A program made the translations under genes and the position numbers. This document shows positions 9,547-61,863 of a stretch of DNA of 64,000 bases, one piece after another. The stretch covers positions 62,001 through 126,000 of IMG/VR virus record IMGVR_UViG_3300028920_000001. One strand, written 5' to 3'. How positions within the stretch are numbered: the first letter of the stretch is position 1; each line of letters begins with the position of its first letter. The notes beneath the pieces are model-generated. The model was not told the origin of the DNA, made no database searches, and was given only the letters and a program-made list of their open reading frames with translations.

Positions 9547-10128
9547 TTACGAAACACAATAGTCCTTCCATGTCGAAGGAGCTTCGGACTCCTCGATTTG
9601 GATAGGAGCTAATGGCAGGTATTTTGGTTTAACTGGCTTAGAAAGCAGCTTCATACCAGCCTGTTGTGGCGTACGATTGGCCTTCTTGCTATTGCAGTCG
9701 TAACAAGAAGTCACAATGTTTGTCCACTCGGTTTTTCCGCCCTGATCACGTGGGATTACGTGGTCATAGTTGAGTTTCGACGCAGGTAACCGTTGTCCGC
9801 AATACTGACAACGGAATTTGTCTCGTGTCAGAACGTTGATCCGAGAAAATTTAGCTCCACGCTTGATATGGCTGATATTTCGCACCAGCGTAACAACAGC
9901 AGGAACCTTAATTAACAAATAGTCTCCACCATCTTGGTTGTGTTGCGCGGGTAGCGCATCCACCAGCTCTTCGAATTCCTCGAGCTGATCGAGTTCGATA
10001 CAACCAATAATTTCATCATATTCCTCGATAACACGGACCTTTCCGAGGAACATTTTAATGACAGCTTCCTGCCAGTTAATGATTTCATGCGGAGTTCGCC
10101 ACGGGGTCAAAACCAACGTTCGCATCAT
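9547..10128 (-). CDS. HNH endonuclease (McrA-like)
   Basis: FSRINVLTRDKFRCQYCG...YDHVIPRDQGGKTEWTNIVTSCYDCNSKK. Confidence 0.9.
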   Translation of the reverse strand: MMRTLVLTPWRTPHEIINWQEAVIKMFLGKVRVIEEYDEIIGCIELDQLEEFEELVDALPAQHNQDGGDYLLIKVPAVVTLVRNISHIKRGAKFSRINVLTRDKFRCQYCGQRLPASKLNYDHVIPRDQGGKTEWTNIVTSCYDCNSKKANRTPQQAGMKLLSKPVKPKYLPLAPIQIEESEAPSTWKDYCVS

Positions 10129-26247: not shown

Positions 26248-26459
26248 GATTCCATTACTTCCTTAGCTACATGGAATTTGGATAGTCGCCATTTTCGAAA
26301 TGCAGAAGGAGCCCAATGAACAGAATCATCCAAGGCCCTCCAATGAGGTCGATATCCATCACGGCCATAGAATGCTTTAACCACAATAATCTCCCCATTT
26401 TCGTCTTCTACTTCAACTGGGACTTCATTCGGTGGTTTGCCAGTTTGCCATTCAGTCAT
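26244..26459 (-). CDS. hypothetical protein with C-terminal VMES tag
   Basis: ends VAKEVMES*. Confidence 0.7.
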   Translation of the reverse strand: MTEWQTGKPPNEVPVEVEDENGEIIVVKAFYGRDGYRPHWRALDDSVHWAPSAFRKWRLSKFHVAKEVMES

Positions 26460-27525
26460 TTCTTTTCCAAATGGTTAAAGAATCACGGATTCCGGGCCAT
26501 TGAGGGATAAGTAACTGATCAATACATTCAAATTCTTCTTCTAATTTAGTATAAAATTCATCATTAGCTGTACATCCGCCAATCTCTCCAATATGAATAA
26601 GATAACGACCTTTCCAATATTGTAAACATTCAGTAGCCATATTATCACCATGTGGCGGCCAACATAAGAAGAGTGTTCTATCAGGAAAATTTTTTAATTG
26701 TTTAGGAAAACCTTTGAGCACTTTTCGATATAATTGCCCATTTGGATGCCAAACATTAAATCCATTGGGAGGTGGGAATTTGTCAAAACAAATAACATCC
26801 CCACCACAGATTTCGATTGCTTTACCCCAGTATCCAGTTCCGGCTCCCATTTCTACTACTGGACCAAAATCAATGATCTTTTTAATGGCTTCTTCAGTAG
26901 GAACGGCCCAAGCATACTTATTAACAACATAATCTCTGATATATAAAGGTTGAACAACATTCGAGAGATTTGGAACTTCATTCATATAAGTAAATATTTC
27001 TTTATTTATTCCAAATAGAGAACAAATTCTATCTATATCGAAAGTTCCTAAAGAAGACATCGCATTTAGATGCAGAATATCAAATTCACTGATATTTTCA
27101 GGAGGCGGAGGACAAATCTCTAAATAAATTCGTAGCAATTCATTAAACTTAACAAGCTTGGGATTAGTTGAAGCCCAAGTAAGCATGGCTTCTTTTTGAG
27201 ACTTAGATAATTTCTTAATTCGAGCTTCTTCTTTTCGAGCAATGGTTTCAGTTTCGCAAGCTCGAGACCAAACTAGACTAAAAGGTCCACGTCCCCGCGT
27301 GTATTTTGCTCCCTTACTGTTGATGTGATTGTGAATACGGTCTCGAAGATGATTGGTTATTCCAGTATAAAGAGATCCATCGCCACAACGAAGGATGTAA
27401 ACAAACCAGGTGCCGTCATATATTCCGAATGGATGGAATACTATCGGATCTGTCATGTTTTCTTGGGTTACTGAGCCCACCAATGAATTTACATTAGCTA
27501 TCCATAATTTGATGAGTAATAGCAT
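26452..27525 (-). CDS. GIY-YIG nuclease (UPF0213-like) fused to a SAM-dependent methyltransferase-like domain
   Basis: WFVYILRCGDGSLYTGIT...GAKYTRGRGP...E..IKKL; C-terminal YAWAVPT...VVEMGAGTGYW...FLCWPP. Confidence 0.8.
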   Translation of the reverse strand: MLLLIKLWIANVNSLVGSVTQENMTDPIVFHPFGIYDGTWFVYILRCGDGSLYTGITNHLRDRIHNHINSKGAKYTRGRGPFSLVWSRACETETIARKEEARIKKLSKSQKEAMLTWASTNPKLVKFNELLRIYLEICPPPPENISEFDILHLNAMSSLGTFDIDRICSLFGINKEIFTYMNEVPNLSNVVQPLYIRDYVVNKYAWAVPTEEAIKKIIDFGPVVEMGAGTGYWGKAIEICGGDVICFDKFPPPNGFNVWHPNGQLYRKVLKGFPKQLKNFPDRTLFLCWPPHGDNMATECLQYWKGRYLIHIGEIGGCTANDEFYTKLEEEFECIDQLLIPQWPGIRDSLTIWKRND

Positions 27526-33783: not shown

Positions 33784-33849
33784 TCAGGGCGGCCCATGAA
33801 CTGGGTCGCCCTGATTTGAAATGGGTTAAGTCCTATTGGAACTTAACCC
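33784..33849. other. two tandem stem-loops
   Basis: TCAGGGCGGCCCA/TGGGTCGCCCTGA (33784-33814) and GGGTTAAG/CTTAACCC (33823-33849). Confidence 0.6.
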
Positions 33850-33863
33850 GCCTTTCTCATTGT

Positions 33864-33917
33864 ACGGTAACCTTTAATCGCCGGCCCAAATTGGGCAAAA
33901 ATTTGACCAAAGGTCGT
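33864..33917 (-). ncRNA. circularly permuted Y-RNA-like module
   Basis: ACCUUUGGUC-AAAUUUUU-GCCC-AAUUU-GGGC-CGGC-GAUUAAAGGU-UACCG. Confidence 0.65.
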
Positions 33918-33975: not shown

Positions 33976-34105
33976 TAGTGAAAGGGGCAGGATTCGAACC
34001 CGCGACACTATGCTTTGCAACGATAACCCTAATCCTACGACCCGGGACGGGTAAAAAGGCGGAAAAGGTCTCTAACACATGCTCTACCAACTGAGCTACC
34101 CTTTC
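33976..34105 (-). ncRNA. tRNA-scaffold / Y-module chimera 1 (130 nt)
   Basis: acceptor GAAAGGG/CCCUUUC, canonical D and T arms, anticodon loop replaced by about 61 nt containing UUUUUACCC-GUCCC-GGGUCGUAGGAUUAGGGUUAUCG. Confidence 0.8.
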
Positions 34106-34108
34106 AAA

Positions 34109-34178
34109 ACGGGTAAAGAATTGATACCGGACTGTTGTCTTCAGAAAAGAGGGCGATAACCCGATATCTCCGACCCGT
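34109..34178 (-). ncRNA. Y-RNA-like RNA (70 nt)
   Basis: 5' ACGGGUCGGAGAUAUCGGGUUAUCG ... AAUUCUUUACCCGU 3'; promoter motif TGTAAAGT 5 nt upstream. Confidence 0.75.
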
Positions 34179-34199
34179 ATCAAACTTTACACCTGAAAA

Positions 34200-35050: not shown

Positions 35051-35869
35051 CTACTGGTAGATATTAACTACTGCATTATTACCGTACACTTCTTTAGCTC
35101 GTTGATCATAAGCCATGGCAGCTAATTCTTCTGTTTCAAAACTACCTATAACACGGGTCTTTCCATCGTAAAACAAACGAGCCCTCCAACTTTTACCTCC
35201 TTTTGGTTTATATACTCCCTTATACTTAGAAGTCTTCTTTTTATTCAGGGCTACTCGATCAAAGATGTCTTTCTTTCGTTCCATCCAAACTGAAGCATCT
35301 TTGTACATCCATTCTTTAATACGTAGTATTTCATATTTGCTGCTCCATTGAATCTTGTGGCATTTCTGAAATATAATTTTAGTATTCCTAATACTAAGCC
35401 TGTTTACCAAGATTGATTTAATGAATTGAACGAATTCGTATGTTCCAACAAAATAAACACAAAATAATCCATTCTTCTTTTGACTTATTCCTCCATCTCC
35501 GTCAAAATATCCTCGTATGAAATGATGGACTAATTCTAAAGGAATATAGTCGAATACTTTAGAATTTAATACTTTAGTCTTCTGCTTTGGTACGTCTTTG
35601 TCTAAAATAGAATTACATAAATATTTAGAAGATAACAAACATCGAACATGCTCATAGTTTTTACGAGTTCTTTTATCGTAAGAAGTTTTAATTCGCACAG
35701 AAACATTAAATATGGAAGCCAATTTATCTAAATGCAATTTATCTTTAGATGATAAATAAAAACAAACCTGTTTTCCATTTGGATAAATGCATCCATCGGC
35801 ACAGAAGAATCCAAACCAGTAGGCTTGCTCTTCTGTGCCGATGGTGTCGAAGAATTCTTGTCTCTTCAT
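35051..35869 (-). mobile_element. LAGLIDADG homing endonuclease with C-terminal AP2 domain
   Basis: YWFGFFCADGCI, HFIRGYFDGDGGI; AP2 KYKGVY...WRARL...IGSFETEELAAMAYD. Confidence 0.88.
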
Positions 35870-35891: not shown

Positions 35892-37637
35892 TTAAAATTC
35901 TCCTTTGGAGAAAGAAGAAATAAGATCGGGGACTGAAGTATCCATGCCACAAATGTCCAACATTCCAGGATCACGCGGGTCAGCGATGGTAAATTTATCG
36001 CTGGTTAGACCGCAAACAATCAGCCGAGCTTGACGGCCCATTTCCTGCCGATACTTACGCAGGGCCTGAAAGGGCTGCATGCGGCCGGCCCACGTTTCAT
36101 TGTCCGTGTAGACCATGAACGTATCAACTTCGATCTTGTGCTTTAGAGCATACAGCATTGGCTGTGAGCAATCAGTTCCACCGAAGTCTTGACGGGCAGT
36201 GACTTCACAAACCTGATCCAGCCGCATTTTCGGGCTGATATTCAGAACAGTTACGCCACTATCAGGATCGCTGGAAGAATTATTACGACTACCCCAACCC
36301 CAACCGCCACCGGATTCACAAGTGAATCCGATTACCTGCCAATTCTGCTCGAGCTTAGCAGTAACCATGGCCATAGCAGCTGCGGCTTCACGACAAGTCA
36401 AAGTACCACATCCTTGGATGGCAGAGCCCATAGACCCAGAAACATCCAAAGCAAGCAAGTAGTTTTTACCTGTCGGCTGAACTGACTTGAATGCCGTATA
36501 AAATGCAGAATCCATGGCATCAATTACTTGAGTTACTGGGCTCCAGCTGAGTTTACCCTTATCACCATGACCAGATTGATACTGCTTCATAGCAATCAGG
36601 ATCTTCATCGGGTGAAGACGACTCTTACGGATGGCTTCCTCGTTGGCGAACTGTTCAGCTACTTTCTTGGAAGCGGCACTCATCGGCTTGATTAGTCCAC
36701 AAGCCGTCATAACTCCCAAATTACGCGTTAGCGCTGTCATCGGAAGACCACGGTCGAGCAGAGCCTCCCAAATCTCAGGCTCTTTCTTCCACTGAGTCGG
36801 AAGCATCTCATGGCTGAGCCAATATTCATGAATCAACTTGATTACTTCCGCCTTTGATTCGGCCAGCTGGACGGCTTCGAAACCATGGACCAGCTTCGGC
36901 AGAGCTTCCCGATTGAGCTCCTCATAGGAGTCCATACGAGAGTCCTTCTTCTGGCCCTTTCTGAGCACTTCTCGGGCCTCGAGGCTACCATCTTGGGTAA
37001 CCCACCGAAATAGCGCTTGATAAGCTCCGGAATCCATTTCCGGGTCACGACGGACCAATTCAAATGGGTTGGCGTGGCTCAGCTTCAGAAGATCCTTGTG
37101 GGACCATCCATTTCGTTGCTGATACTTGACCAATTGAAGAGCCAACTTATCGGCCGGCTTATCGAGATACCAATTAGCTACAGCATTCCGAAGAGCCCGT
37201 CCCCAACGCCGGAAATTCTCAACATCAGCCGCAAAGTTGAATAGATCAGTACCAATACGGCAAACCTTCGGTAAAGCTTGAAGGGCCGCCTTTCGCACTT
37301 CATTATCCGAATGACCGGCTGCCATGGCGAGACAGAATACTGCCGGATCATTTTTGACCGCACGACCTGCCTGGCTGATTTCAGCGATACGCTTGACTGT
37401 CCGGATACCGTCTTGTTTCAGACACTCCCCAATTGCCTTAGCATTTTCCTTGACGAGCTTTTTCTCGCCAACGTAATAAGTCGAACCCTCAGCACCAAGA
37501 ATCAAAAACCGGTCTAAGCTAGTCCAGCAATCGACCTGCCAAACATAACCGCCTGCACGGTTCTTGACCTGATCCTCACGAGCTTGCTCACTCTGAGAAG
37601 TTACTCGTGGATTGACAATTTCTCCATACCTGGTCAT
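35892..37637 (-). CDS. rsr: Ro60 / TROVE-domain RNA-binding protein with vWA domain (Rsr-like)
   Basis: start MTRYG at 37637 after AGGAG; NRAGGY, LDRFLILGAEG.TYY, KYQQRNGWSHKDLLKLSH, ALTRNLG.MT, RLHP, vWA LALDVSGSM, TDNETW, D..MLD.CG.D. Confidence 0.93.
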   Translation of the reverse strand: MTRYGEIVNPRVTSQSEQAREDQVKNRAGGYVWQVDCWTSLDRFLILGAEGSTYYVGEKKLVKENAKAIGECLKQDGIRTVKRIAEISQAGRAVKNDPAVFCLAMAAGHSDNEVRKAALQALPKVCRIGTDLFNFAADVENFRRWGRALRNAVANWYLDKPADKLALQLVKYQQRNGWSHKDLLKLSHANPFELVRRDPEMDSGAYQALFRWVTQDGSLEAREVLRKGQKKDSRMDSYEELNREALPKLVHGFEAVQLAESKAEVIKLIHEYWLSHEMLPTQWKKEPEIWEALLDRGLPMTALTRNLGVMTACGLIKPMSAASKKVAEQFANEEAIRKSRLHPMKILIAMKQYQSGHGDKGKLSWSPVTQVIDAMDSAFYTAFKSVQPTGKNYLLALDVSGSMGSAIQGCGTLTCREAAAAMAMVTAKLEQNWQVIGFTCESGGGWGWGSRNNSSSDPDSGVTVLNISPKMRLDQVCEVTARQDFGGTDCSQPMLYALKHKIEVDTFMVYTDNETWAGRMQPFQALRKYRQEMGRQARLIVCGLTSDKFTIADPRDPGMLDICGMDTSVPDLISSFSKGEF

Positions 37638-37695
37638 GGTTTTTTCTCCTTGAACGGCCCGAAATTCAGGCAAAAACCCAGATAGCGAAATCTGG
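37638..37695 (-). promoter_or_regulatory. Y-RNA-like module in the Ro60 5' UTR overlapping its Shine-Dalgarno
   Basis: GGUUUUU-GCCUG-AAUUU-CGGGC-CGUUC-AAGGAG-AAAAAACC-AUG. Confidence 0.6.
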
Positions 37696-43209: not shown

Positions 43210-43472
43210 ATTGTAAGTTAGTGAGTGGACTACAGTAAATTAATAGAACTTCGTTCTGTCAAATATCAAATTTCCCGTACTTGTGGCTTATGTCAGCACG
43301 GGGAATTTATTGATGGGGAATGGGGAACTTGTTTAGTTAGTGGTTATTCTCCACTAAAACACCGACAACAAGGTAAGAAATGTAAAATCAATAAATTCGG
43401 TAGCTGCAATAAATTCAGATTTGATACTAAATCATATCTTCAGCTTGGGGAATTTGTAGAATTCTTAAATAG

Positions 43473-43545
43473 AGCTGCTGATAGGACTTGAACCTACAAC
43501 CGGAGCTTTACAAAAGCCCTGTTCTACCAATTGAACTACAGCAGC
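43473..43545 (-). tRNA. tRNA-Thr(UGU)
   Basis: GCUGCUG/CAGCAGC, loop UU-UGU-AA. Confidence 0.9.
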
Positions 43546-47780: not shown

Positions 47781-47858
47781 TAGTACGGAGGGCGGGATTC
47801 GAACCCGCACTGTCTAGCATCTCGGGCTAGTGCCTCTGCCTAGTTGGGCTACCTCCGC
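47781..47858 (-). tRNA. tRNA-Leu(GAG), short variable loop
   Basis: CUAGC-CCGAGAU-GCUAG, variable ACAGU. Confidence 0.85.
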
Positions 47859-48397: not shown

Positions 48398-48618
48398 GTT
48401 ATGTCGAAGAAGTCTGGGACTTAGCTTCACAAGTCGCTAATTTCCAAGATGACGAACTGCTTTGGAACACTAGTGACTATGTTTATATTTCAGTTCCTGC
48501 TCGCTTAATACAAAGACTTTGGTGGGCTACACGTTGTGATCTCGATGTTACTAAAACAGGCATTAAACGATCATGGACTTTCCAAGAAGCGATTGTCTAT
48601 GAAGTGATGGGATCGTAG
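48394..48618 (+). CDS. hypothetical protein with C-terminal VMGS tag
   Basis: ends IVYEVMGS*. Confidence 0.65.
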   Translation: MSYVEEVWDLASQVANFQDDELLWNTSDYVYISVPARLIQRLWWATRCDLDVTKTGIKRSWTFQEAIVYEVMGS

Positions 48619-48692
48619 TACCCGTGATAGGATTCGAACCTACACTGTACGGCACCTAAAGCCGTCGCCTCTGCCAGTTGGGCTACACGGGC
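48616..48692 (-). tRNA. tRNA-Leu(UAG), short variable loop
   Basis: ACGGC-UUUAGGU-GCCGU, variable ACAGU. Confidence 0.88.
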
Positions 48693-49013
48693 ATGAAACC
48701 TTCAAAAATCAGAAGAAATTATGGACACATGAAGATTGAAGGCATTCCAATTATAGATCCTGAAATTTTGTCATATATGAATTGCTGTTTTGTTCATCTA
48801 TGTAAAAACAAAACCGTTACGTATTACCAACTGCATGAAAATGGGAAGATTTCATACCAAGCATACTGTGTTGATCATCAATATTATCTTCGAGATGAAC
48901 ACAATAAAATCAGTTATGGTTATTGGATACGAGGCATAACAAGTTCGCGTCAGTATCGAGTTCATAAAGAAAACTGGAATCAAATAATAGTATGTAACAT
49001 AATGAACGTATAG
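48693..49013 (+). CDS. hypothetical protein with variant tag (IMNV)
   Basis: start reassigned to MKPSK outside the tRNA; ends IVCNIMNV*. Confidence 0.6.
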   Translation: MKPSKIRRNYGHMKIEGIPIIDPEILSYMNCCFVHLCKNKTVTYYQLHENGKISYQAYCVDHQYYLRDEHNKISYGYWIRGITSSRQYRVHKENWNQIIVCNIMNV

Positions 49014-49087
49014 TGCTCAGGGAGGGATTCGAACCCACACTGTGTAGTGTTTGAAACTACCGCCTCTGCCAGTTGGGCTACCTGAGC
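49011..49087 (-). tRNA. tRNA-Leu(CAA), short variable loop
   Basis: GUAGU-UUCAAAC-ACUAC, variable ACAGU. Confidence 0.88.
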
Positions 49088-50466: not shown

Positions 50467-50503
50467 ATTATGGACGGCACAAATCTGAACATACGATAAC
50501 CAT

Positions 50504-50633
50504 TAGTGCCCCGAACAGGATTTGAACCTGTAACATCCGGCTTGAATGGCGATAACCCTTATCCTCCGGCCCGAATCGGGCAAAAAATCGGCAAGGATAT
50601 TTTACGGCGCTCTATCCGTTGAGCTATCGGGGC
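50504..50633 (-). ncRNA. tRNA-scaffold / Y-module chimera 2 (130 nt)
   Basis: acceptor GCCCCGA/UCGGGGC, D and T arms canonical; insert AUCCUUGCCGAUUUUUUGCCCG-AUU-CGGGCCGGAGGAUAAGGGUUAUCGCC. Confidence 0.8.
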
Positions 50634-50748: not shown

Positions 50749-50750
50749 AA

Positions 50751-50880
50751 ACGGGCAAAAAATCGTGAATGGATGTTGAAGGTTGGATTCGAACCAACGA
50801 CCTCCGGATGTTAGTCCGGCGCTCTAACCACTGAGCTACTCGCTCGATTGATGGGCGATAACCCACACACTCCGGCCCGT
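50751..50880 (-). ncRNA. Y-RNA-like RNA carrying an internal degenerate tRNA cloverleaf (130 nt)
   Basis: 5' ACGGGCCGGAGUGUGUGGGUUAUCGCC ... D-arm, CCGGA-CUAACA-UCCGG (6-nt loop), T-arm ... AUCCAUUCACGAUUUUUUGCCCGU 3'; 2-nt spacers to flanking tRNAs. Confidence 0.75.
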
Positions 50881-50882
50881 AT

Positions 50883-50971: not shown

Positions 50972-51049
50972 TAGTAGGGGAGATAGGATTCGAACCTACA
51001 CTGTAGGGTTTTTAAAACCCTCGCCTCTGCCTAGTTGGGCTACTCCCCC
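50972..51049 (-). tRNA. tRNA-Leu(UAA), short variable loop
   Basis: AGGGU-UUUAAAA-ACCCU, variable ACAGU. Confidence 0.88.
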
Positions 51050-52693: not shown

Positions 52694-53041
52694 ATGTTGG
52701 AAGAAATCAAAGCTCAGATGGCAACTGTTTCTTCTCGAGAGAAAAGATTAGATATTATTTATGATGTGATCGATGACGCATTGATAGCAGGTAAGTTTAA
52801 TGAAATTAACCAAATGTTTACAGAAATCAAATGTGAGGAATTTGAAGCAACTGAATTGTTAGGATTTCTAACCATCACTTTAATGGCTCATGGCCAATTA
52901 TCCAATCGTGGATGGTTCTATGATCAATGCAAAATTGAATTATTAAAAAGTCGTCCATTAACAGAAGTTAATAAAATGACAAGTGGCTTGGCATTTCCTT
53001 ATCAAGCCCAAACTCAAGCCAAGAAAATTGTTACTAAATAG
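52694..53041 (+). CDS. hypothetical protein with KKIVTK C-terminal tag
   Basis: ends TQAKKIVTK*. Confidence 0.7.
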   Translation: MLEEIKAQMATVSSREKRLDIIYDVIDDALIAGKFNEINQMFTEIKCEEFEATELLGFLTITLMAHGQLSNRGWFYDQCKIELLKSRPLTEVNKMTSGLAFPYQAQTQAKKIVTK

Positions 53042-53113
53042 TCGGAGTGAGAGGAATTGAACCTCCATGATCTCGGTCCCGAACCGAGTGGCTTACCAGT
53101 TGCCTACACTCCG
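53039..53113 (-). tRNA. tRNA-Pro(CGG)
   Basis: CUCGG-UUCGGGA-CCGAG. Confidence 0.9.
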
Positions 53114-54159: not shown

Positions 54160-54234
54160 TAGTCTCCCCAGCAGGACTCGAACCTGCATAACAAGCTCCG
54201 GAGGCTTGTGCCTTATCCATTAGACGATGAGGAG
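54160..54234 (-). tRNA. tRNA-Arg(CCG)
   Basis: loop CU-CCG-GA. Confidence 0.88.
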
Positions 54235-55117: not shown

Positions 55118-55963
55118 TCATAACCTTGATGTCTTGAACAAATTCCTGCCATCTCGTTTCTTTCTGCCTGTTAGTTCATATAATGAAGTGCCATTTCTCA
55201 TTAGCCAACAATCAATTGAAATCCAAGTTCTTCCGTCAGTTGACTGACAACTTTTCTTATCCCGATTAACAATAGGGAGTCTTCCAGTTTGAACAAAGAA
55301 ATCTTTGATCCATGATTTAATTAACGGGATTGTAAATGATGGATATGAACGAGTCTTTAGACCAAGCTTCTCTTTCATATAGATTCCTGTACTCATTTTA
55401 TGATTTTTACGAATCCATTCACCAATAGTTCTCCAGTCCCATCCATTAGTAAATTCGTTGCCTTTATGCGGAACTTTTTGGTATTTTGCATAATAGAGTT
55501 TAATCCAACTATCAACAGATGCTTTGGTTAGTGGAACATGTGGTCCTTTAAAACCAATAAACTCTGGTGTTACCCTCTTAGTTTCTATCCTCTGTTTAAT
55601 TGGCTTTCTTCTATCAAATTTTTTATCTAGAGCTCGAGCTTTCTTTAAAGTTATGAGTCTCAAGTTATCTCTGCAGAAATTTAACTTATTCCCATCTAGA
55701 TGATAAATAACGTATCCTCTTTTCCCTTTCTTTCCTTTAATGAAATACTTCAGATTATGACATGGTTCTCCAATACTATGTAGAGAATGGACCTGTTTGC
55801 CTTTTTTCCATACCCACTTATATTCATTAACTCGATCCCAGTCCTTTTCATCAATTAATGCAAAATTTCCATTTCCCACTTCTATCCATTGTTTACCAGG
55901 CTTTTTTCGTGGTTTCGGATGTCCGTAGGTAGATGACGGTTTTGGCACATTATTATTGTACAT
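55118..55963 (-). mobile_element. HNH-related homing endonuclease homolog with repeated C-terminal DNA-binding-like units
   Basis: FALIDEKDWDRVNEYKW...YHLDGNKLNFCRDNL; repeated 'I.SWIK.(Y/F)...G..P...W..I..W.R'. Confidence 0.65.
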
Positions 55964-56668: not shown

Positions 56669-56744
56669 TAGAGCAGGATACGAGATTCGAACTCGTGATT
56701 TTCTGGTTGGAAGCCAGACGCCTTACCAACTTGGCTAATCCTGC
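56669..56744 (-). tRNA. tRNA-Gly(UCC)
   Basis: UCUGG-CUUCCAA-CCAGA. Confidence 0.9.
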
Positions 56745-56875: not shown

Positions 56876-56877
56876 AA

Positions 56878-56942
56878 ACGGGCAAAAAATTGACGGAAGG
56901 CAGTTTCGTTTACAAGGCGATAACCTTCAATCTCCGGCCCGT
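56878..56942 (-). ncRNA. Y-RNA-like RNA (65 nt)
   Basis: ACGGGCCGGAGAUUGAAGGUUAUCGCC...CCUUCCGUCAAUUUUUUGCCCGU; 2 nt upstream of tRNA-Thr. Confidence 0.75.
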
Positions 56943-56965
56943 AAATCTTTTTGTAGAGTCAAAAC

Positions 56966-58065: not shown

Positions 58066-58142
58066 TAGTGGAACCGGAGGGATTCAAACCCTCGACCTCT
58101 TGTCTGCCAGACAAGCGCTCTCTCGGACTGAGCTACGATCCC
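58066..58142 (-). tRNA. tRNA-Ala(GGC)
   Basis: G3:U70, CUUGU-CUGGCAG-ACAAG. Confidence 0.88.
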
Positions 58143-58143
58143 G

Positions 58144-58217
58144 TAGCGGGCTGTCATGGGATCGAACCATGAGCAGTGGACTTGGAAACCACTATGTTGC
58201 CATTACACCAACAGCCC
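58144..58217 (-). tRNA. tRNA-Trp(CCA)
   Basis: GUGGU-UUCCAAG-UCCAC, G73. Confidence 0.88.
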
Positions 58218-58936
58218 TAAGCCGCTTTCTTAAAGAATTTTCTGGAATTCTTTAATTTCTCTTTGTCTGTTTCATCCCAAATCTTTTTCTTACGCTTCAT
58301 GAAAATGGTTGCGTCTTTGTACATCCATTCACAGAGAAGCATTGAATCGTACTGATTAAATATCAACTTCTGAGCTTTTCCATTAGCAATCTTTTTGTTT
58401 CCCACAGGAATAAACTCACGGAGCTTCTGTTTAAAATCTTCTAAGAAATTTCCGGTGTCATTCCCGGCAGTGAAAGAAGTTCCTAAAGCAGAAATACGTC
58501 TCCCGTGTCGATTATTGTAATGCTTGTAATATATAGACCCATCCCCATCGAAATAGCCACGTACAAAATGATGAAAATACTTGTTAGGAATTTTGGGATA
58601 AGAGTATTTAAATGACTTCTTTCTAGTACCTCCAAAACTTATTAATTTATTGACCATATGATTACTTCCAAATCTAACAAATCCATACGACGATCCCCTA
58701 CCATAGGATTTTGGGTTAGAACTAATGATTTGAATCTTTTTCTTTAGTTTCATTAAATCAATTATCATTTCAAGATGATCAACATCTTTCCCAGAAAAAC
58801 TTATTCTAGCATGAGACCTCTTCCCATTCTTACGATGTCTGATGTATATACTTCCATCAGCCCACCAGAATCCAAACACGTAGGCTGAAGCTTCATTCCA
58901 TTGATCAAAGAATTTTTCGTTAACTCTCCAATTCAC
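58217..58936 (-). mobile_element. LAGLIDADG homing endonuclease, free-standing, abutting tRNA-Trp
   Basis: AYVFGFWWADGSI, HFVRGYFDGDGSI. Confidence 0.88.
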
Positions 58937-61166: not shown

Positions 61167-61238
61167 GTAGGAGAGCGGGTATCGAACCCGCAATGTTTGA
61201 TTCGAGGTCAGATGTTTATCCATTAAACGATAACCTAC
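61167..61238 (-). tRNA. tRNA-Arg(UCG)-like, imperfect acceptor; 5' strand overlaps the Y motif GGUUAUCG
   Basis: D-arm GUUU/AAAC, loop CC-UCG-AA, T-arm GCGGG/CCCGC; preceded by GGGCCGGACGCGUG (61251-61238). Confidence 0.65.
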
Positions 61239-61254
61239 ACGCGTCCGGCCCATA

Positions 61255-61354
61255 TAGTCCGGGAGATAAGATTTGAACTTACGATAACCATCCTTCAACG
61301 GCCCGTACACGGGCAAAGAACGATGGACGGATGGCCGCCATGGCCAACTCCCGG
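61255..61354 (-). ncRNA. tRNA-scaffold / Y-module chimera 3 (100 nt, no anticodon stem)
   Basis: acceptor CCGGGAG/CUCCCGG, D-arm GGCC/GGCC, T-arm GUAAG-UUCAAAU-CUUAU; insert UUCUUUGCCCGU-GU-ACGGGCCGUUGAAGGAUGGUUAUC. Confidence 0.75.
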
Positions 61355-61365
61355 GTAGCCGATCA

Positions 61366-61791
61366 TTGATCGGTGTAATCTTTTTCGTGAGTAATAAAGT
61401 AGTTAAAATAAATAAAAGTGGAGTAACAGGAACTATTACTCATTTAGATGCAGTCATGAAAGAGCTTGCTAATTTTTTACAAAATAGCGAATTTGCTTTT
61501 GTTAATTATATAGATTTGGCATTCATCAATGATTTGATAGTAAAAGCTCCTAACATTAATGCCACTATTTCTGAGTCCCTTTATACCCCAAGAAATATTA
61601 CCATTTTTGGGGTTAGGCTCGAGCGTTATAGTTTTATTCCACAAGGTTGGGTTTTCGCAGCTGATACCAAACCTAATTGTTTATCTGATTTACTGTCAAT
61701 GGACTGCAAAAAGATTCCATATGAAGATGACGATCCTTGGATTTTGGAAACTGAAGACCTGGTTCGTGTTTTCATTATTATGAATATGTAG
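61366..61791 (+). CDS. hypothetical protein with variant tag (IMNM)
   Basis: ends VFIIMNM*. Confidence 0.6.
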   Translation: MIGVIFFVSNKVVKINKSGVTGTITHLDAVMKELANFLQNSEFAFVNYIDLAFINDLIVKAPNINATISESLYTPRNITIFGVRLERYSFIPQGWVFAADTKPNCLSDLLSMDCKKIPYEDDDPWILETEDLVRVFIIMNM

Positions 61792-61863
61792 TACCCCCGG
61801 AAGGAATCGAACCTTCATCTCATGATTAGGAATCATGTGCTTGATCCATTAAGCTACGAGGGC
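61789..61863 (-). tRNA. tRNA-Arg(CCU)
   Basis: CAUGA-UUCCUAA-UCAUG. Confidence 0.9.

What the first reader, a model, noticed from the sequence alone, without database searches (positions are those of the whole stretch)
33976..34105. tRNA scaffolds whose anticodon loop is replaced by a circularly permuted Y module (three cases)
Seen: 33976-34105 and 50504-50633 (both 130 nt) and 61255-61354 (100 nt) have perfect 7-bp acceptor stems and recognisable D and T arms but no anticodon. In its place is the Y module in reversed order: the U-rich/RCCC strand first, a 2-5 nt loop, then GGGYCG-N9-GGUUAUCG. Established: YrlA-type Y RNAs mimic tRNA but keep free ends at the Ro-binding stem. Here the topology is inverted, with real tRNA-like ends and a capped Ro stem. 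Inference: these could be matured by RNase P and CCA-adding enzyme and possibly aminoacylated or bound by EF-Tu. They might act as decoys for anticodon nucleases or synthetases, as adaptors tethering Ro60 to tRNA-handling enzymes, or as precursors nicked at the small loop.
Basis: partly seen in the sequence, partly recalled or inferred. Interest (0 to 1): 0.86.

Follow-up and report, generated by a model that had tools for sequence, protein, structure and literature searches.

The report
tRNA-shaped Ro60-binding Y RNAs
Three small RNA genes in a 427-kb phage are tRNA look-alikes whose anticodon stem carries an extra hairpin with the binding site for the phage's own Ro60 protein; they belong to a conserved form of bacterial YrlA "Y RNAs" in normal tRNA order, present in many phages and bacteria, for which I found no description in the searchable literature.

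Summary
On the minus strand, 33979-34105, 50507-50633 and 61258-61354 each have a perfect 7-bp acceptor stem and D and T arms. Each carries a 50-56-nt hairpin with the U-rich/RCCC strand, a 3-4-nt cap, then GGGYCG-N9-GGUUAUCG. A Ro60/Rsr gene lies at 35892-37673, same strand.

"No anticodon" is wrong for cases 1 and 2. The hairpin interrupts the 5' strand of an otherwise complete 5-bp anticodon stem with a 7-nt loop.

About 57 relatives occur in roughly 19 phage contigs and in at least 11 bacterial genomes: cyanobacteria, Myxococcota, Chloroflexota, Armatimonadota and an unclassified bacterium. Most lie beside rsr. Covariation supports every helix, including the pairs that span the insert, and the Levitt pair covaries. 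CCA follows the discriminator about ten times more often than chance.

The loop triplets are unconstrained. They include A34 triplets, UCA, and GCU without a long variable arm, so these are tRNA mimics, not decoders. Closed-acceptor YrlAs in sister loci share the same junction.

Best reading: YrlA-class Y RNAs in native tRNA order, with free tRNA ends and a capped Ro60 arm. Splicing to a normal tRNA is not excluded but is disfavoured. I found no published description: a new variant of a known kind.

The parts
33979..34105 (-). Case 1, tRNA-order Y RNA (127 nt including A73). Acceptor 34099-34105 / 33980-33986. D arm 34081-34096. Anticodon-stem strands 34075-34079 (UGUGU) and 34009-34013 (GCAUA). 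54-nt Ro60-module insert 34021-34074, with GGGUCG..GGUUAUCG at 34021-34043. 7-nt loop UUGCAAA 34014-34020. T arm 33987-34003. CUA trailer 33976-33978.
   Evidence: (100.4 bits)
50507..50633 (-). Case 2, tRNA-order Y RNA (127 nt). Acceptor 50627-50633 / 50508-50514. D arm 50609-50624. Stem nt 27-29 CCG at 50605-50607. Insert 50551-50604. Local GC plus loop CAUUCAA plus GCCGG at 50537-50550. T arm 50515-50531. CUA trailer 50504-50506.
   Evidence: 96.1 bits; z -2.35
61258..61354 (-). Case 3, reduced form (97 nt). Acceptor 61348-61354 / 61259-61265. Short D-like hairpin. Module with GGGCCG..GGUUAUCG at 61282-61304. T arm 61266-61282 follows the motif directly. No anticodon arm and no variable loop. 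CUA trailer 61255-61257.
   Evidence: 59.4 bits; z -4.13. Same reduced type in L021 8742, L020 6534, L065 570, L094 5934 and L152 1424.
35892..37673 (-). Ro60/Rsr orthologue (593 aa), the presumed protein partner. It lies 1.8 kb upstream of case 1 on the same strand.
   Evidence: TROVE 1.5e-42, vWA_Ro60 2e-62; Ro60 structures, E 2.5e-123
34106..34180 (-). Ordinary-order Y RNA: 5' ACGGGUCGG..GGUUAUCG, 3' UUCUUUACCCGU. Its 3' end abuts nt 1 of case 1, so one RNase P cut would make both ends.
56876..56943 (-). Ordinary-order Y RNA abutting tRNA-Thr(GGU).
   Evidence: z -3.16
50749..50882 (-). Third topology: the two Y-module strands flank a tRNA-like D / anticodon(AAC) / T body. The Ro60 helix takes the place of the acceptor stem, as in D. 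radiodurans Yrn1.
   Evidence: (tRNA 49.9 bits at 50777-50845)
33865..33916 (-). Capped (reversed-order) Y hairpin without a tRNA body, followed by a terminator-like hairpin.
   Evidence: 34 bits; z -3.06

Best explanation
These are non-coding Y RNAs of the bacterial YrlA class, built in native tRNA order.

Anatomy. Each RNA is a tRNA-shaped body with a free 7-bp acceptor stem, a D arm, a T arm and the elbow nucleotides. In cases 1 and 2 there is also a complete anticodon stem-loop. A 50-56-nt capped hairpin is inserted into the 5' strand of the anticodon stem: after nt 28-29 in most relatives, after nt 31 in case 1. [quoted passage not shown]

Shown by sequence and comparison: the fold, its conservation, and the linkage to rsr.

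Inferred mechanism:
1. The RNAs are co-transcribed with neighbouring Y RNAs and tRNAs.
2. RNase P cuts at nt 1. The 3' trailer is trimmed and CCA is added or repaired, as for the phage's tRNAs.
3. The phage Rsr ring binds the capped arm.
4. The tRNA-like body, including a U-turn anticodon-like loop that does not decode, docks onto tRNA-handling proteins. The RNA thereby tethers or gates Rsr, as other Y RNAs tether Rsr to exoribonucleases.

The effector and the benefit to the phage are unknown.
For: Structure:
- Perfect acceptor, D and T arms plus the module in all three window copies. Rfam tRNA hits with one insertion.
- Covariation on 23 sequences: 90.2% of cells paired against 40-49% for slid controls, and 31 of 35 pairs show compensatory changes. 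The acceptor stem is 100% paired. The junction-spanning pairs 27-28:42-43 are 95% paired, with CG, UA and GC types.
- tRNA tertiary signature across 57 sequences: U8 50, A14 55, GG in the D loop 52, T loop 51, G53:C61 54. The Levitt pair covaries, G15:C48 in 30 and A15:U48 in 15.

Link to Ro60:
- Ro60 gene in the window.
- The module is abundant beside rsr in 30 related phage loci.
- A pattern search blind to rsr, followed by a covariance model, found about 34 tRNA-order copies in about 19 phage contigs. Fourteen of those contigs show rsr within the fetched DNA.
- The same RNAs sit next to rsr in Nostoc, Leptolyngbyaceae, Sorangium, other Myxococcota, Chloroflexota and Armatimonadota.

Anticodon arm is a mimic:
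- 34 of 57 have a perfect composite 5-bp stem plus 7-nt loop, against 3.5 expected. U33 is present in 25 of 29 and R37 in 27 of 29. There are 19 different triplets, including AUG x2, AGG x2, AUC and UCA x2.
- GCU occurs without a long variable arm.

tRNA-like ends:
- CCA after the discriminator in at least 9 of 57, against about 0.9 expected.
- The window copies share the N73-CUA trailer with 12 of 24 phage tRNA genes.

Same family as YrlA:
- Closed-acceptor YrlAs in sister loci have the same A-rich linker, GGUUAU linker and composite arm.
- Published motifs are GNCGAAN0-1G and YUAY, and RNase P cleavage plus CCA addition is documented for a YrlA with a 7-bp stem (PMC4201824).
Against: - No expression, end-mapping or Rsr-binding data exist for any member.
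- The window copies match the published Ro60 motif only approximately (GUCGUAGG, GCCGGAGG, GCCGUUGAAGG instead of GNCGAAN0-1G). Exact matches occur in relatives.
- Cases 2 and 3 lie 13-25 kb from rsr, inside the tRNA array.
- No Rfam Y-RNA family matched, even at E<=1.
- In-silico removal of the insert gives standard cloverleaves in 20 of 21, so an intron reading is not excluded.
- Folding z-scores are modest for case 1 (-1.4).
- Module helix 2 is only 76% paired in the MAFFT alignment.
Confidence: 0.7

Rival explanations
1. Intron-containing tRNA genes. The Ro60 module is a protein-dependent intron that is cut out at the A-rich and GGUUAU linkers. The exons are ligated, for example by an RtcB-type ligase, to give functional tRNA-Cys(GCA) and tRNA-Glu(UUC). 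The excised module may itself serve as a Y RNA.
For: - Deleting the 50-56-nt insert restores a perfect 5-bp anticodon stem with a 7-nt loop in 34 of 57, against 3.5 expected. ARAGORN then of 21 as tRNAs.
- Insert size is tightly conserved.
- No ordinary tRNA-Cys or tRNA-Glu lies in the window's array or in the 2.4 kb beyond it.
- In Salmonella, rsr and Y RNAs are co-operonic with the splicing-type ligase RtcB (literature).
Against: - The triplets are not those of real decoders. A34 occurs in 5 of 29 and never as ACG. UCA occurs twice. GCU occurs without a class II variable arm.
- Case 2 has A33. Case 1 has A73 and G15:C48, not the U73 and G15:G48 of E. coli-type tRNA-Cys (E. coli rule from my own knowledge).
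- Many members (case 3, L002_1, L032_1, L115_2, L041, L082) have no anticodon loop at all.
- The covariation-supported fold is a three-way junction, not a bulge-helix-bulge.
- The insert is far too small for a group I intron, and Rfam gives no intron hit.
- No RtcB or splicing endonuclease was found in the window or in the few neighbouring ORFs tested in L189, L221 and L002.
- The module is under selection as a Ro60 site, and closed-acceptor YrlAs have the same junction.
Confidence: 0.08
2. Processing intermediates. The chimera is cut after transcription, either in the small capping loop or in the junction linkers. This would give a two-piece, base-paired RNA with free ends at the Ro60 helix, mirroring the RNase P-nicked M. 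smegmatis YrlA. The nicked form would be the active one.
For: - M. smegmatis YrlA exists in vivo mainly as two halves that both co-precipitate with Rsr.
- The A-rich and U-rich single-stranded linkers are plausible endonuclease sites (inference).
Against: - The capping loop is only 3-4 nt, on a G+C-rich 4-5-bp helix that covaries.
- Nothing in the sequence marks a cleavage site.
- There are no data.
Confidence: 0.12
3. Dead tRNA genes. A repeated or mobile Y-module landed in tRNA genes of the array and inactivated them, and the chimeras have no function of their own.
For: - The module is a repeat family in the window, with 8-9 copies in several contexts, including degenerate fusions at 61167-61250 and an orphan GGUUAUCG at 50494.
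- Homing endonuclease genes are scattered through the region.
Against: - The same architecture is kept across phages and four or more bacterial phyla. Compensatory changes occur in every helix, the tertiary nucleotides are conserved and the Levitt pair covaries.
- The insertion point and both linkers are conserved.
- Linkage to rsr.
- Encoded CCA is enriched.
Confidence: 0.04

Closest known systems
YrlA (Y RNA-like A) of Salmonella Typhimurium and more than 250 bacteria and phages (Chen et al. 2014, PMC4201824; Wang et al. 2018, bioRxiv 10.1101/312249)
   Same: Encoded beside and co-oriented with Ro60/Rsr. GNCGAAN0-1G-type motif on the 5' strand of the Ro60 helix. YUAY motif at the junction. 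tRNA-like D and T arms with tRNA tertiary nucleotides and a covarying Levitt pair. A hairpin between the Ro60 helix and the T arm, which those authors call the 'V' arm.
   Different: YrlA is a circularly permuted tRNA. Its T arm precedes its D arm, its acceptor stem is closed by a loop, and its 5' and 3' ends lie at the Ro60 helix. Here the order is that of a tRNA, the acceptor stem has the free ends, often with encoded CCA, and the Ro60 helix is capped. Here the 'V' hairpin plus two or three nucleotides after the D arm form an exact 5-bp, 7-nt-loop anticodon arm.
[quoted passage not shown] 2014)
   Same: A 7-bp acceptor-like stem recognised as a tRNA end, with a CCA-tailed 3' end, in an Rsr-bound RNA.
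   Different: That RNA becomes two pieces and keeps open ends at the Ro60 helix as well. The RNAs here would be one continuous chain with a single pair of ends.
Deinococcus radiodurans Yrn1
   Same: A Y RNA whose tRNA-like part runs D, then anticodon-like arm, then T, with the Ro60 helix formed by the ends. This matches the window RNA at 50749-50882.
   Different: This is not the topology of the three cases of the finding. Yrn1 has only partial D-arm features and a 6-nt 'anticodon' loop.
Intron-containing and permuted tRNA genes of archaea and red algae (bulge-helix-bulge splicing); bacterial group I introns in tRNA genes
   Same: An insertion interrupts the anticodon arm, and its removal in silico restores a cloverleaf.
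   Different: No bulge-helix-bulge. At 50-56 nt the insert is far below group I size. No endonuclease or ligase lies nearby. The loop triplets are not those of decoders. The insert is a conserved protein-binding module.
tmRNA and viral tRNA-like structures
   Same: tRNA mimics with a real acceptor end joined to a non-tRNA functional domain.
   Different: Those are aminoacylated and act on ribosomes or replicases. Nothing here shows charging, and the added domain is a Ro60 site.

Membership tests
YrlA-class bacterial Y RNA | Encoded within a few kb of, and on the same strand as, a Ro60/Rsr (TROVE) gene | tested here: met
   Case 1 lies 1.8 kb downstream of rsr on the same strand. Cases 2 and 3 are on the same strand but 13-25 kb away. 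Rsr is visible in 14 of 19 phage contigs and 11 bacterial loci that carry relatives.
YrlA-class bacterial Y RNA | GNCGAAN0-1G motif in the Ro60-binding strand | tested here: inconclusive
   The window copies read GUCGUAGG, GCCGGAGG and GCCGUUGAAGG, which are near matches. Exact GCCGAAG or GUCGAAG occurs in many relatives, e.g. L043, L014, L032, L160 and L208.
YrlA-class bacterial Y RNA | Conserved YUAY at the junction after the Ro60 helix | tested here: met
   UUAU within GGUUAUCG in all three cases. It is invariant in alignment A2.
YrlA-class bacterial Y RNA | tRNA-like D and T arms with tRNA tertiary nucleotides and a covarying Levitt pair | tested here: met
   Case 1 has G15:C48 and case 2 has A15:U48.
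YrlA-class bacterial Y RNA | Permuted order: T arm 5' of D arm, acceptor stem closed by a loop, ends at the Ro60 helix | tested here: not met
   D arm precedes T arm, the ends are at the acceptor stem and the Ro60 helix is capped by 3-4 nt. I therefore file these as a topological variant, not a standard member.
YrlA-class bacterial Y RNA | Binds Rsr in vivo or in vitro | not testable with these tools
   Needs RIP or EMSA.
Functional (decoding) tRNA | Contiguous cloverleaf found by tRNA gene finders | tested here: not met
   ARAGORN calls none of the three. Rfam tRNA matches only with a 54-nt insertion.
Functional (decoding) tRNA | Anticodon triplet and body that fit a natural isoacceptor | tested here: not met
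   Across the family, A34 triplets other than ACG, UCA, and GCU without a long variable arm occur. Case 2 has A33.
Intron-containing tRNA (archaeal/eukaryal type) | Bulge-helix-bulge at the exon-intron boundaries | tested here: not met
   The covariation-supported fold puts both boundaries at one three-way junction: an A-rich linker of 3-6 nt, a GUUAU linker, and no linker on the third side. No 4-bp helix is possible between the intron start and the start of exon 2. This was judged by inspection.
Group I intron in a tRNA gene | Intron of 200 nt or more with a P1-P9 core | tested here: not met
   The insert is 50-56 nt. No Rfam intron hit.

The most novel reading that the evidence does not exclude
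The Ro60-binding hairpin is a genuine, protein-dependent tRNA intron of bacteria and phages. Rsr would mark the pre-tRNA, an unknown nuclease would cut at the A-rich and GGUUAU linkers, and an RtcB-type ligase would join the exons. tRNA supply would then be gated by the Ro60 system, and the excised module would become a Y RNA. This would be the first non-self-splicing tRNA intron outside archaea and eukaryotes. It would also explain why rsr, Y RNAs and RtcB travel together.
Probability: 0.07. Interest if true: 0.95.

Novelty: new variant of a known kind. Interest (0 to 1): 0.7.

Why it matters
YrlA RNAs are the most widespread bacterial Y RNAs. Neither the partner of their tRNA-like domain nor their origin is known.

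- **A second topology.** These RNAs are the same family in native tRNA order, with real and often CCA-encoding tRNA ends and an intact anticodon-like arm.
- **The 'V arm' is reinterpreted.** The hairpin published as a variable arm behaves as an anticodon arm split by the Ro60 module.
- **An intermediate for the origin model.** The published idea is that YrlA arose from tandem tRNA transcripts. Tandem copies in L030 share near-identical acceptor stems and can fold either way.
- **A possible answer to missing YrlAs.** Few YrlAs were found in cyanobacteria and delta-proteobacteria with models that assume the permuted order (section 18). The tRNA-order form occurs in exactly these groups.
- **New experiments become possible.** A one-piece, CCA-ended tRNA mimic bound to Ro60 makes charging, EF-Tu binding, tRNA-modification and anticodon-nuclease decoy hypotheses directly testable. 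Cultured hosts such as Nostoc and Sorangium carry the RNA.

Tried and rejected
- **Rfam.** No Y-RNA family hit at gathering scores or at E<=1; only tRNA and tmRNA matched.
- **GenBank phages.** No near match to the rsr region. A distant search with the case 2 region found only ordinary tRNA similarity.
- **ARAGORN with the intron option.** It gives inconsistent anticodons and intron positions, so it is not informative.
- **RNA repair or splicing genes.** I looked for RtcB, other RNA ligases and splicing endonucleases. None appeared among 40 window ORFs or among the 10 ORFs tested from loci L189, L221 and L002.
- **Extending the contig.** 2.4 kb beyond the window end holds no further tRNAs or chimeras, so whether the phage has ordinary tRNA-Cys or tRNA-Glu elsewhere in its 427 kb stays open.
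- **Cultured Ro60-encoding phages.** Atu_ph07, Forza, Catera and Yaboi were sampled. No tRNA-order copy scored above 45 bits.
- **Promoter and terminator scan around case 1.** Uninformative.
- **MAFFT alignment.** It misplaces the 5' strand of module helix 2 in some rows, so that helix is under-counted.
- **Reviews not held.** Sim & Wolin 2018 and Sim et al. 2020 are not in the library, so I could not check them for prior mention.

Full report
**What is there**

The window is part of IMGVR_UViG_3300028920_000001, a 426,960-bp phage contig. It has no close relative among GenBank phages. Almost all genes and RNA genes lie on the minus strand. ARAGORN finds 24 tRNAs and a tmRNA.

The three stated loci read on the minus strand as follows:
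- a perfect 7-bp acceptor stem;
- U8 and a D arm;
- a long hairpin made of a U-rich strand ending in RCCC(G), a 3-4-nt cap, then GGGYCG-N9-GGUUAUCG;
- a T arm, the 3' acceptor strand, A73 and the trailer CUA.

The Rfam tRNA model matches cases 1 and 2 end to end at 48-49 bits with one large insertion. ARAGORN calls none of them. RNAfold returns the expected cloverleaf-plus-hairpin for all three, with z-scores of -1.4, -2.35 and -4.1. The motif is far above chance and is strand-specific: GGTTATCG occurs 8 times against 1.1 expected, and the 23-nt pattern 9 times against 0.19 expected.

**A correction to the observation**

The module does not simply replace the anticodon.

In case 1, the five nucleotides after N26 (UGUGU) pair perfectly with GCAUA just before the variable loop. 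Directly after GGUUAUCG comes a 7-nt loop, UUGCAAA.

In case 2, CCG after N26 and GC after GGUUAUC together pair with GCCGG around the loop CAUUCAA.

The 54-nt module is therefore an insertion in the 5' strand of an otherwise complete anticodon arm. Case 3 is a reduced form: the T arm follows GGUUAUC directly, with no anticodon arm and no variable loop.

**Context**

ORF 35892-37673 (minus strand) is a Ro60/Rsr orthologue. It matches TROVE at 1.5e-42 and the Ro60 vWA domain at 2e-62. It matches solved Ro60 structures at E 2.5e-123.

Between rsr and case 1 lies an ordinary-order Y RNA (34106-34180) whose 3' end abuts nt 1 of case 1. A second ordinary Y RNA (56876-56943) abuts tRNA-Thr.

The RNA at 50749-50882 uses the two module strands to close a tRNA-like D / anticodon / T body. 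This is the topology of D. radiodurans Yrn1.

The hairpin at 33865-33916 is a capped module without a tRNA body.

The published YrlA hallmarks are a GNCGAAN0-1G motif in the Ro60-binding strand and a conserved YUAY at the start of the 'V' region (PMC4201824). They correspond to GGGYCG(A/G/U)(A)G and to the UUAU of GGUUAUCG.

**Relatives**

Thirty phage loci encode Rsr proteins 32-52% identical to the window's. The module is abundant beside rsr in them.

I then searched IMG/VR with a pattern for the reversed module order. This search is blind to rsr. A parser and a covariance model built from 19 copies (A1, R1) followed. Together they gave about 34 non-redundant tRNA-order copies in about 19 phage contigs. 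Fourteen of those contigs show rsr within the fetched DNA, usually within 1.5 kb and on the same strand.

The same pattern in one-genome-per-species bacterial contigs, followed by R1, found strong copies next to rsr in:
- Nostoc, including sp. LEGE 12447;
- Leptolyngbyaceae;
- Sorangium sp. So ce1099 and other Myxococcota;
- Chloroflexota;
- Armatimonadota.

A Prochloraceae contig (L208) also carries strong copies, but no rsr was visible in the fetched stretch.

The Nostoc copies sit in a chromosomal context. The class is therefore not phage-specific.

**Structure by comparison**

RNAalifold on A1 shows compensatory changes in 11-12 of 19 sequences at most acceptor positions.

I wrote out the full structure on a 23-sequence alignment (A2). 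It comprises the acceptor, D stem, pairs 27-28:42-43 spanning the insert, module helix 2, the apical RCCC/GGGY helix, local pairs 29-31:39-41 and the T stem. The results were:
- 90.2% of cells pair, against 40-49% for slid controls and 68% for shuffles;
- 31 of 35 pairs show changes on both sides;
- the acceptor and T stems are 100% paired;
- the junction-spanning helix is 95% paired, with CG, UA and GC at 28:42.

The fold is therefore a tRNA whose anticodon stem forms a three-way junction with the Ro60 arm. The junction has an A-rich linker of 3-6 nt, a (G)UUAU linker, and no linker on the third side.

The tRNA tertiary nucleotides are kept across 57 sequences: U8 in 50, A14 in 55, GG in the D loop in 52, the T loop in 51 and G53:C61 in 54. 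The Levitt pair covaries, with G15:C48 in 30 and A15:U48 in 15. Case 1 is G:C and case 2 is A:U.

**Is the anticodon arm real, and does it decode?**

Of the 57 sequences, 34 have a perfect composite 5-bp stem with a 7-nt loop, against 3.5 expected from shuffling the interior (21 of 34 against 2.06 for phages alone). In the 29 where the insert lies inside the stem, U33 occurs in 25 and a purine at position 37 in 27. This is the U-turn signature.

The triplets, however, number 19 different kinds. They include AUG x2, AGG x2 and AUC, which have A34 but are never ACG. They also include UCA x2, and GCU in bodies with a 5-nt variable loop. By contrast, the window's 24 real tRNAs have A34 only in ACG.

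Case 2 has A33. Case 1 has A73 and G15:C48, which are not the tRNA-Cys features known from E. coli (that comparison rests on my own knowledge).

The loop is therefore conserved as a shape, not as a decoder.

**Are the ends tRNA-like?**

CCA follows the discriminator in at least 9 of 57 copies, against about 0.9 expected. Several Nostoc and Prochloraceae copies gain an encoded CCA if the stem is shifted by one nucleotide.

In the window, 12 of 24 ordinary tRNA genes carry N73-CUA, and so do all three chimeras. This points to a shared 3' maturation route.

M. smegmatis YrlA has a 7-bp acceptor-like stem. It is cut by RNase P and receives CCA in vivo.

**Relation to YrlA**

Closed-acceptor, permuted YrlAs in sister loci (L025 1875, L028 9635, L098 4009, L108 433) have the same A-rich linker, the same GGUUAU linker and the same composite 5-bp, 7-nt-loop arm. 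The chimeras are therefore the same family cut open at the other end.

The literature describes YrlA as resembling a circularly permuted tRNA. It proposes an origin from dimeric tRNA transcripts (bioRxiv 10.1101/312249). In L030, two tandem chimeras have near-identical acceptor strands. The 3' half of one plus the 5' half of the next therefore folds as a permuted YrlA.

Chen et al. found few YrlAs in cyanobacteria and delta-proteobacteria (section 18). The tRNA-order form is found in these groups. That it accounts for the 'missing' YrlAs is my inference.

I found no description of the tRNA-order form in the searchable literature. Two reviews were not held.

**Rivals**

*Splicing.* Deleting the insert in silico gives ARAGORN-callable tRNAs in 20 of 21, and the window's array lacks Cys and Glu tRNAs. 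Against this:
- the triplets are unnatural;
- many members have no loop at all;
- there is no bulge-helix-bulge and no group I core;
- no ligase or endonuclease gene lies in the window or in the neighbouring ORFs tested in three other loci.

I put it at about 0.08.

*Nicked two-piece forms.* Possible and not exclusive (0.12).

*Dead tRNA genes.* Contradicted by covariation across phyla (0.04).

**Verdict**

The feature is real. It is a conserved family linked to Ro60. It is best read as YrlA-class Y RNA in native tRNA order, with a capped Ro60 arm inserted in the anticodon stem.

Shown: the fold, its conservation and the linkage to rsr. [quoted passage not shown] Unknown: the effector and the benefit to the phage.

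Noticed in passing
window, all tRNA genes (e.g. 43472-43545, 47783-47858, 48618-48692, 49013-49087, 50974-51049, 53041-53113, 54162-54234, 56671-56744, 58068-58217, 61791-61863): Twelve of the 24 ordinary tRNA genes have CUA, not CCA, directly after the discriminator. About eight have CCA. The three chimeras also have A73-CUA. I have no explanation. It suggests a common 3' trimming or CCA-repair route.
   Followed up: partly
window 50749-50882 (-): A Y RNA in which the two Ro60-module strands enclose a tRNA-like D arm, an anticodon arm (loop CUAACAU) and a T arm. The acceptor stem is degenerate, with 4 of 7 pairs. Rfam scores it as tRNA at 49.9 bits and ARAGORN is silent. This is the Yrn1-like topology. 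The phage therefore carries three different tRNA/Y arrangements.
   Followed up: partly
window 33865-33916 (-), terminator-like hairpin 33818-33850: A fourth reversed-order (capped) Y hairpin without an acceptor stem or T arm. It lies just downstream of case 1 and ahead of a strong hairpin followed by AUUU.
   Followed up: partly
window 61167-61250 (-) and 50494-50501 (-): At 61167-61250, a GGGCCGG..GGUUAUCG strand is fused to a weak tRNA (Rfam 35.9 bits). The GGUUAUC motif forms part of that tRNA's 5' acceptor strand. At 50494-50501 an orphan GGUUAUCG lies 5 nt after the end of case 2. Both are unexplained.
   Followed up: no
window 63069-64000 and beyond (L145 1546-2745): A phage-encoded EF-Tu (399 aa, with the GTP_EFTU, D2 and D3 domains) at the upstream edge of the tRNA array.
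   Followed up: partly
window 13832-14185 (-) and 18541-18615 (-): A phage tmRNA (tag ANDNASLAIAA). Also a 75-nt tRNA with anticodon UCA that ARAGORN labels SeC. It is too short for a selenocysteine tRNA, so it is possibly an opal suppressor.
   Followed up: no
window 35051-35869, 58217-58936, 26452-27525, 9547-10128, 55118-55963 (all -): Homing-endonuclease-type ORFs (LAGLIDADG x2, GIY-YIG, HNH x2) are interspersed with the RNA genes. One lies directly downstream of rsr.
   Followed up: no
L030 8597-8850: Two tandem tRNA-order chimeras have almost identical acceptor stems (GUUGUGG and GUUGUAG). The 3' half of the first and the 5' half of the second can therefore fold as a closed-acceptor, permuted YrlA.
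   Followed up: partly
L160 3999-4121 and 4275-4398 (Leptolyngbyaceae): A further variant alternates with the standard chimeras. Here the capped module follows the D arm directly, and a long extra segment precedes the T arm.
   Followed up: no
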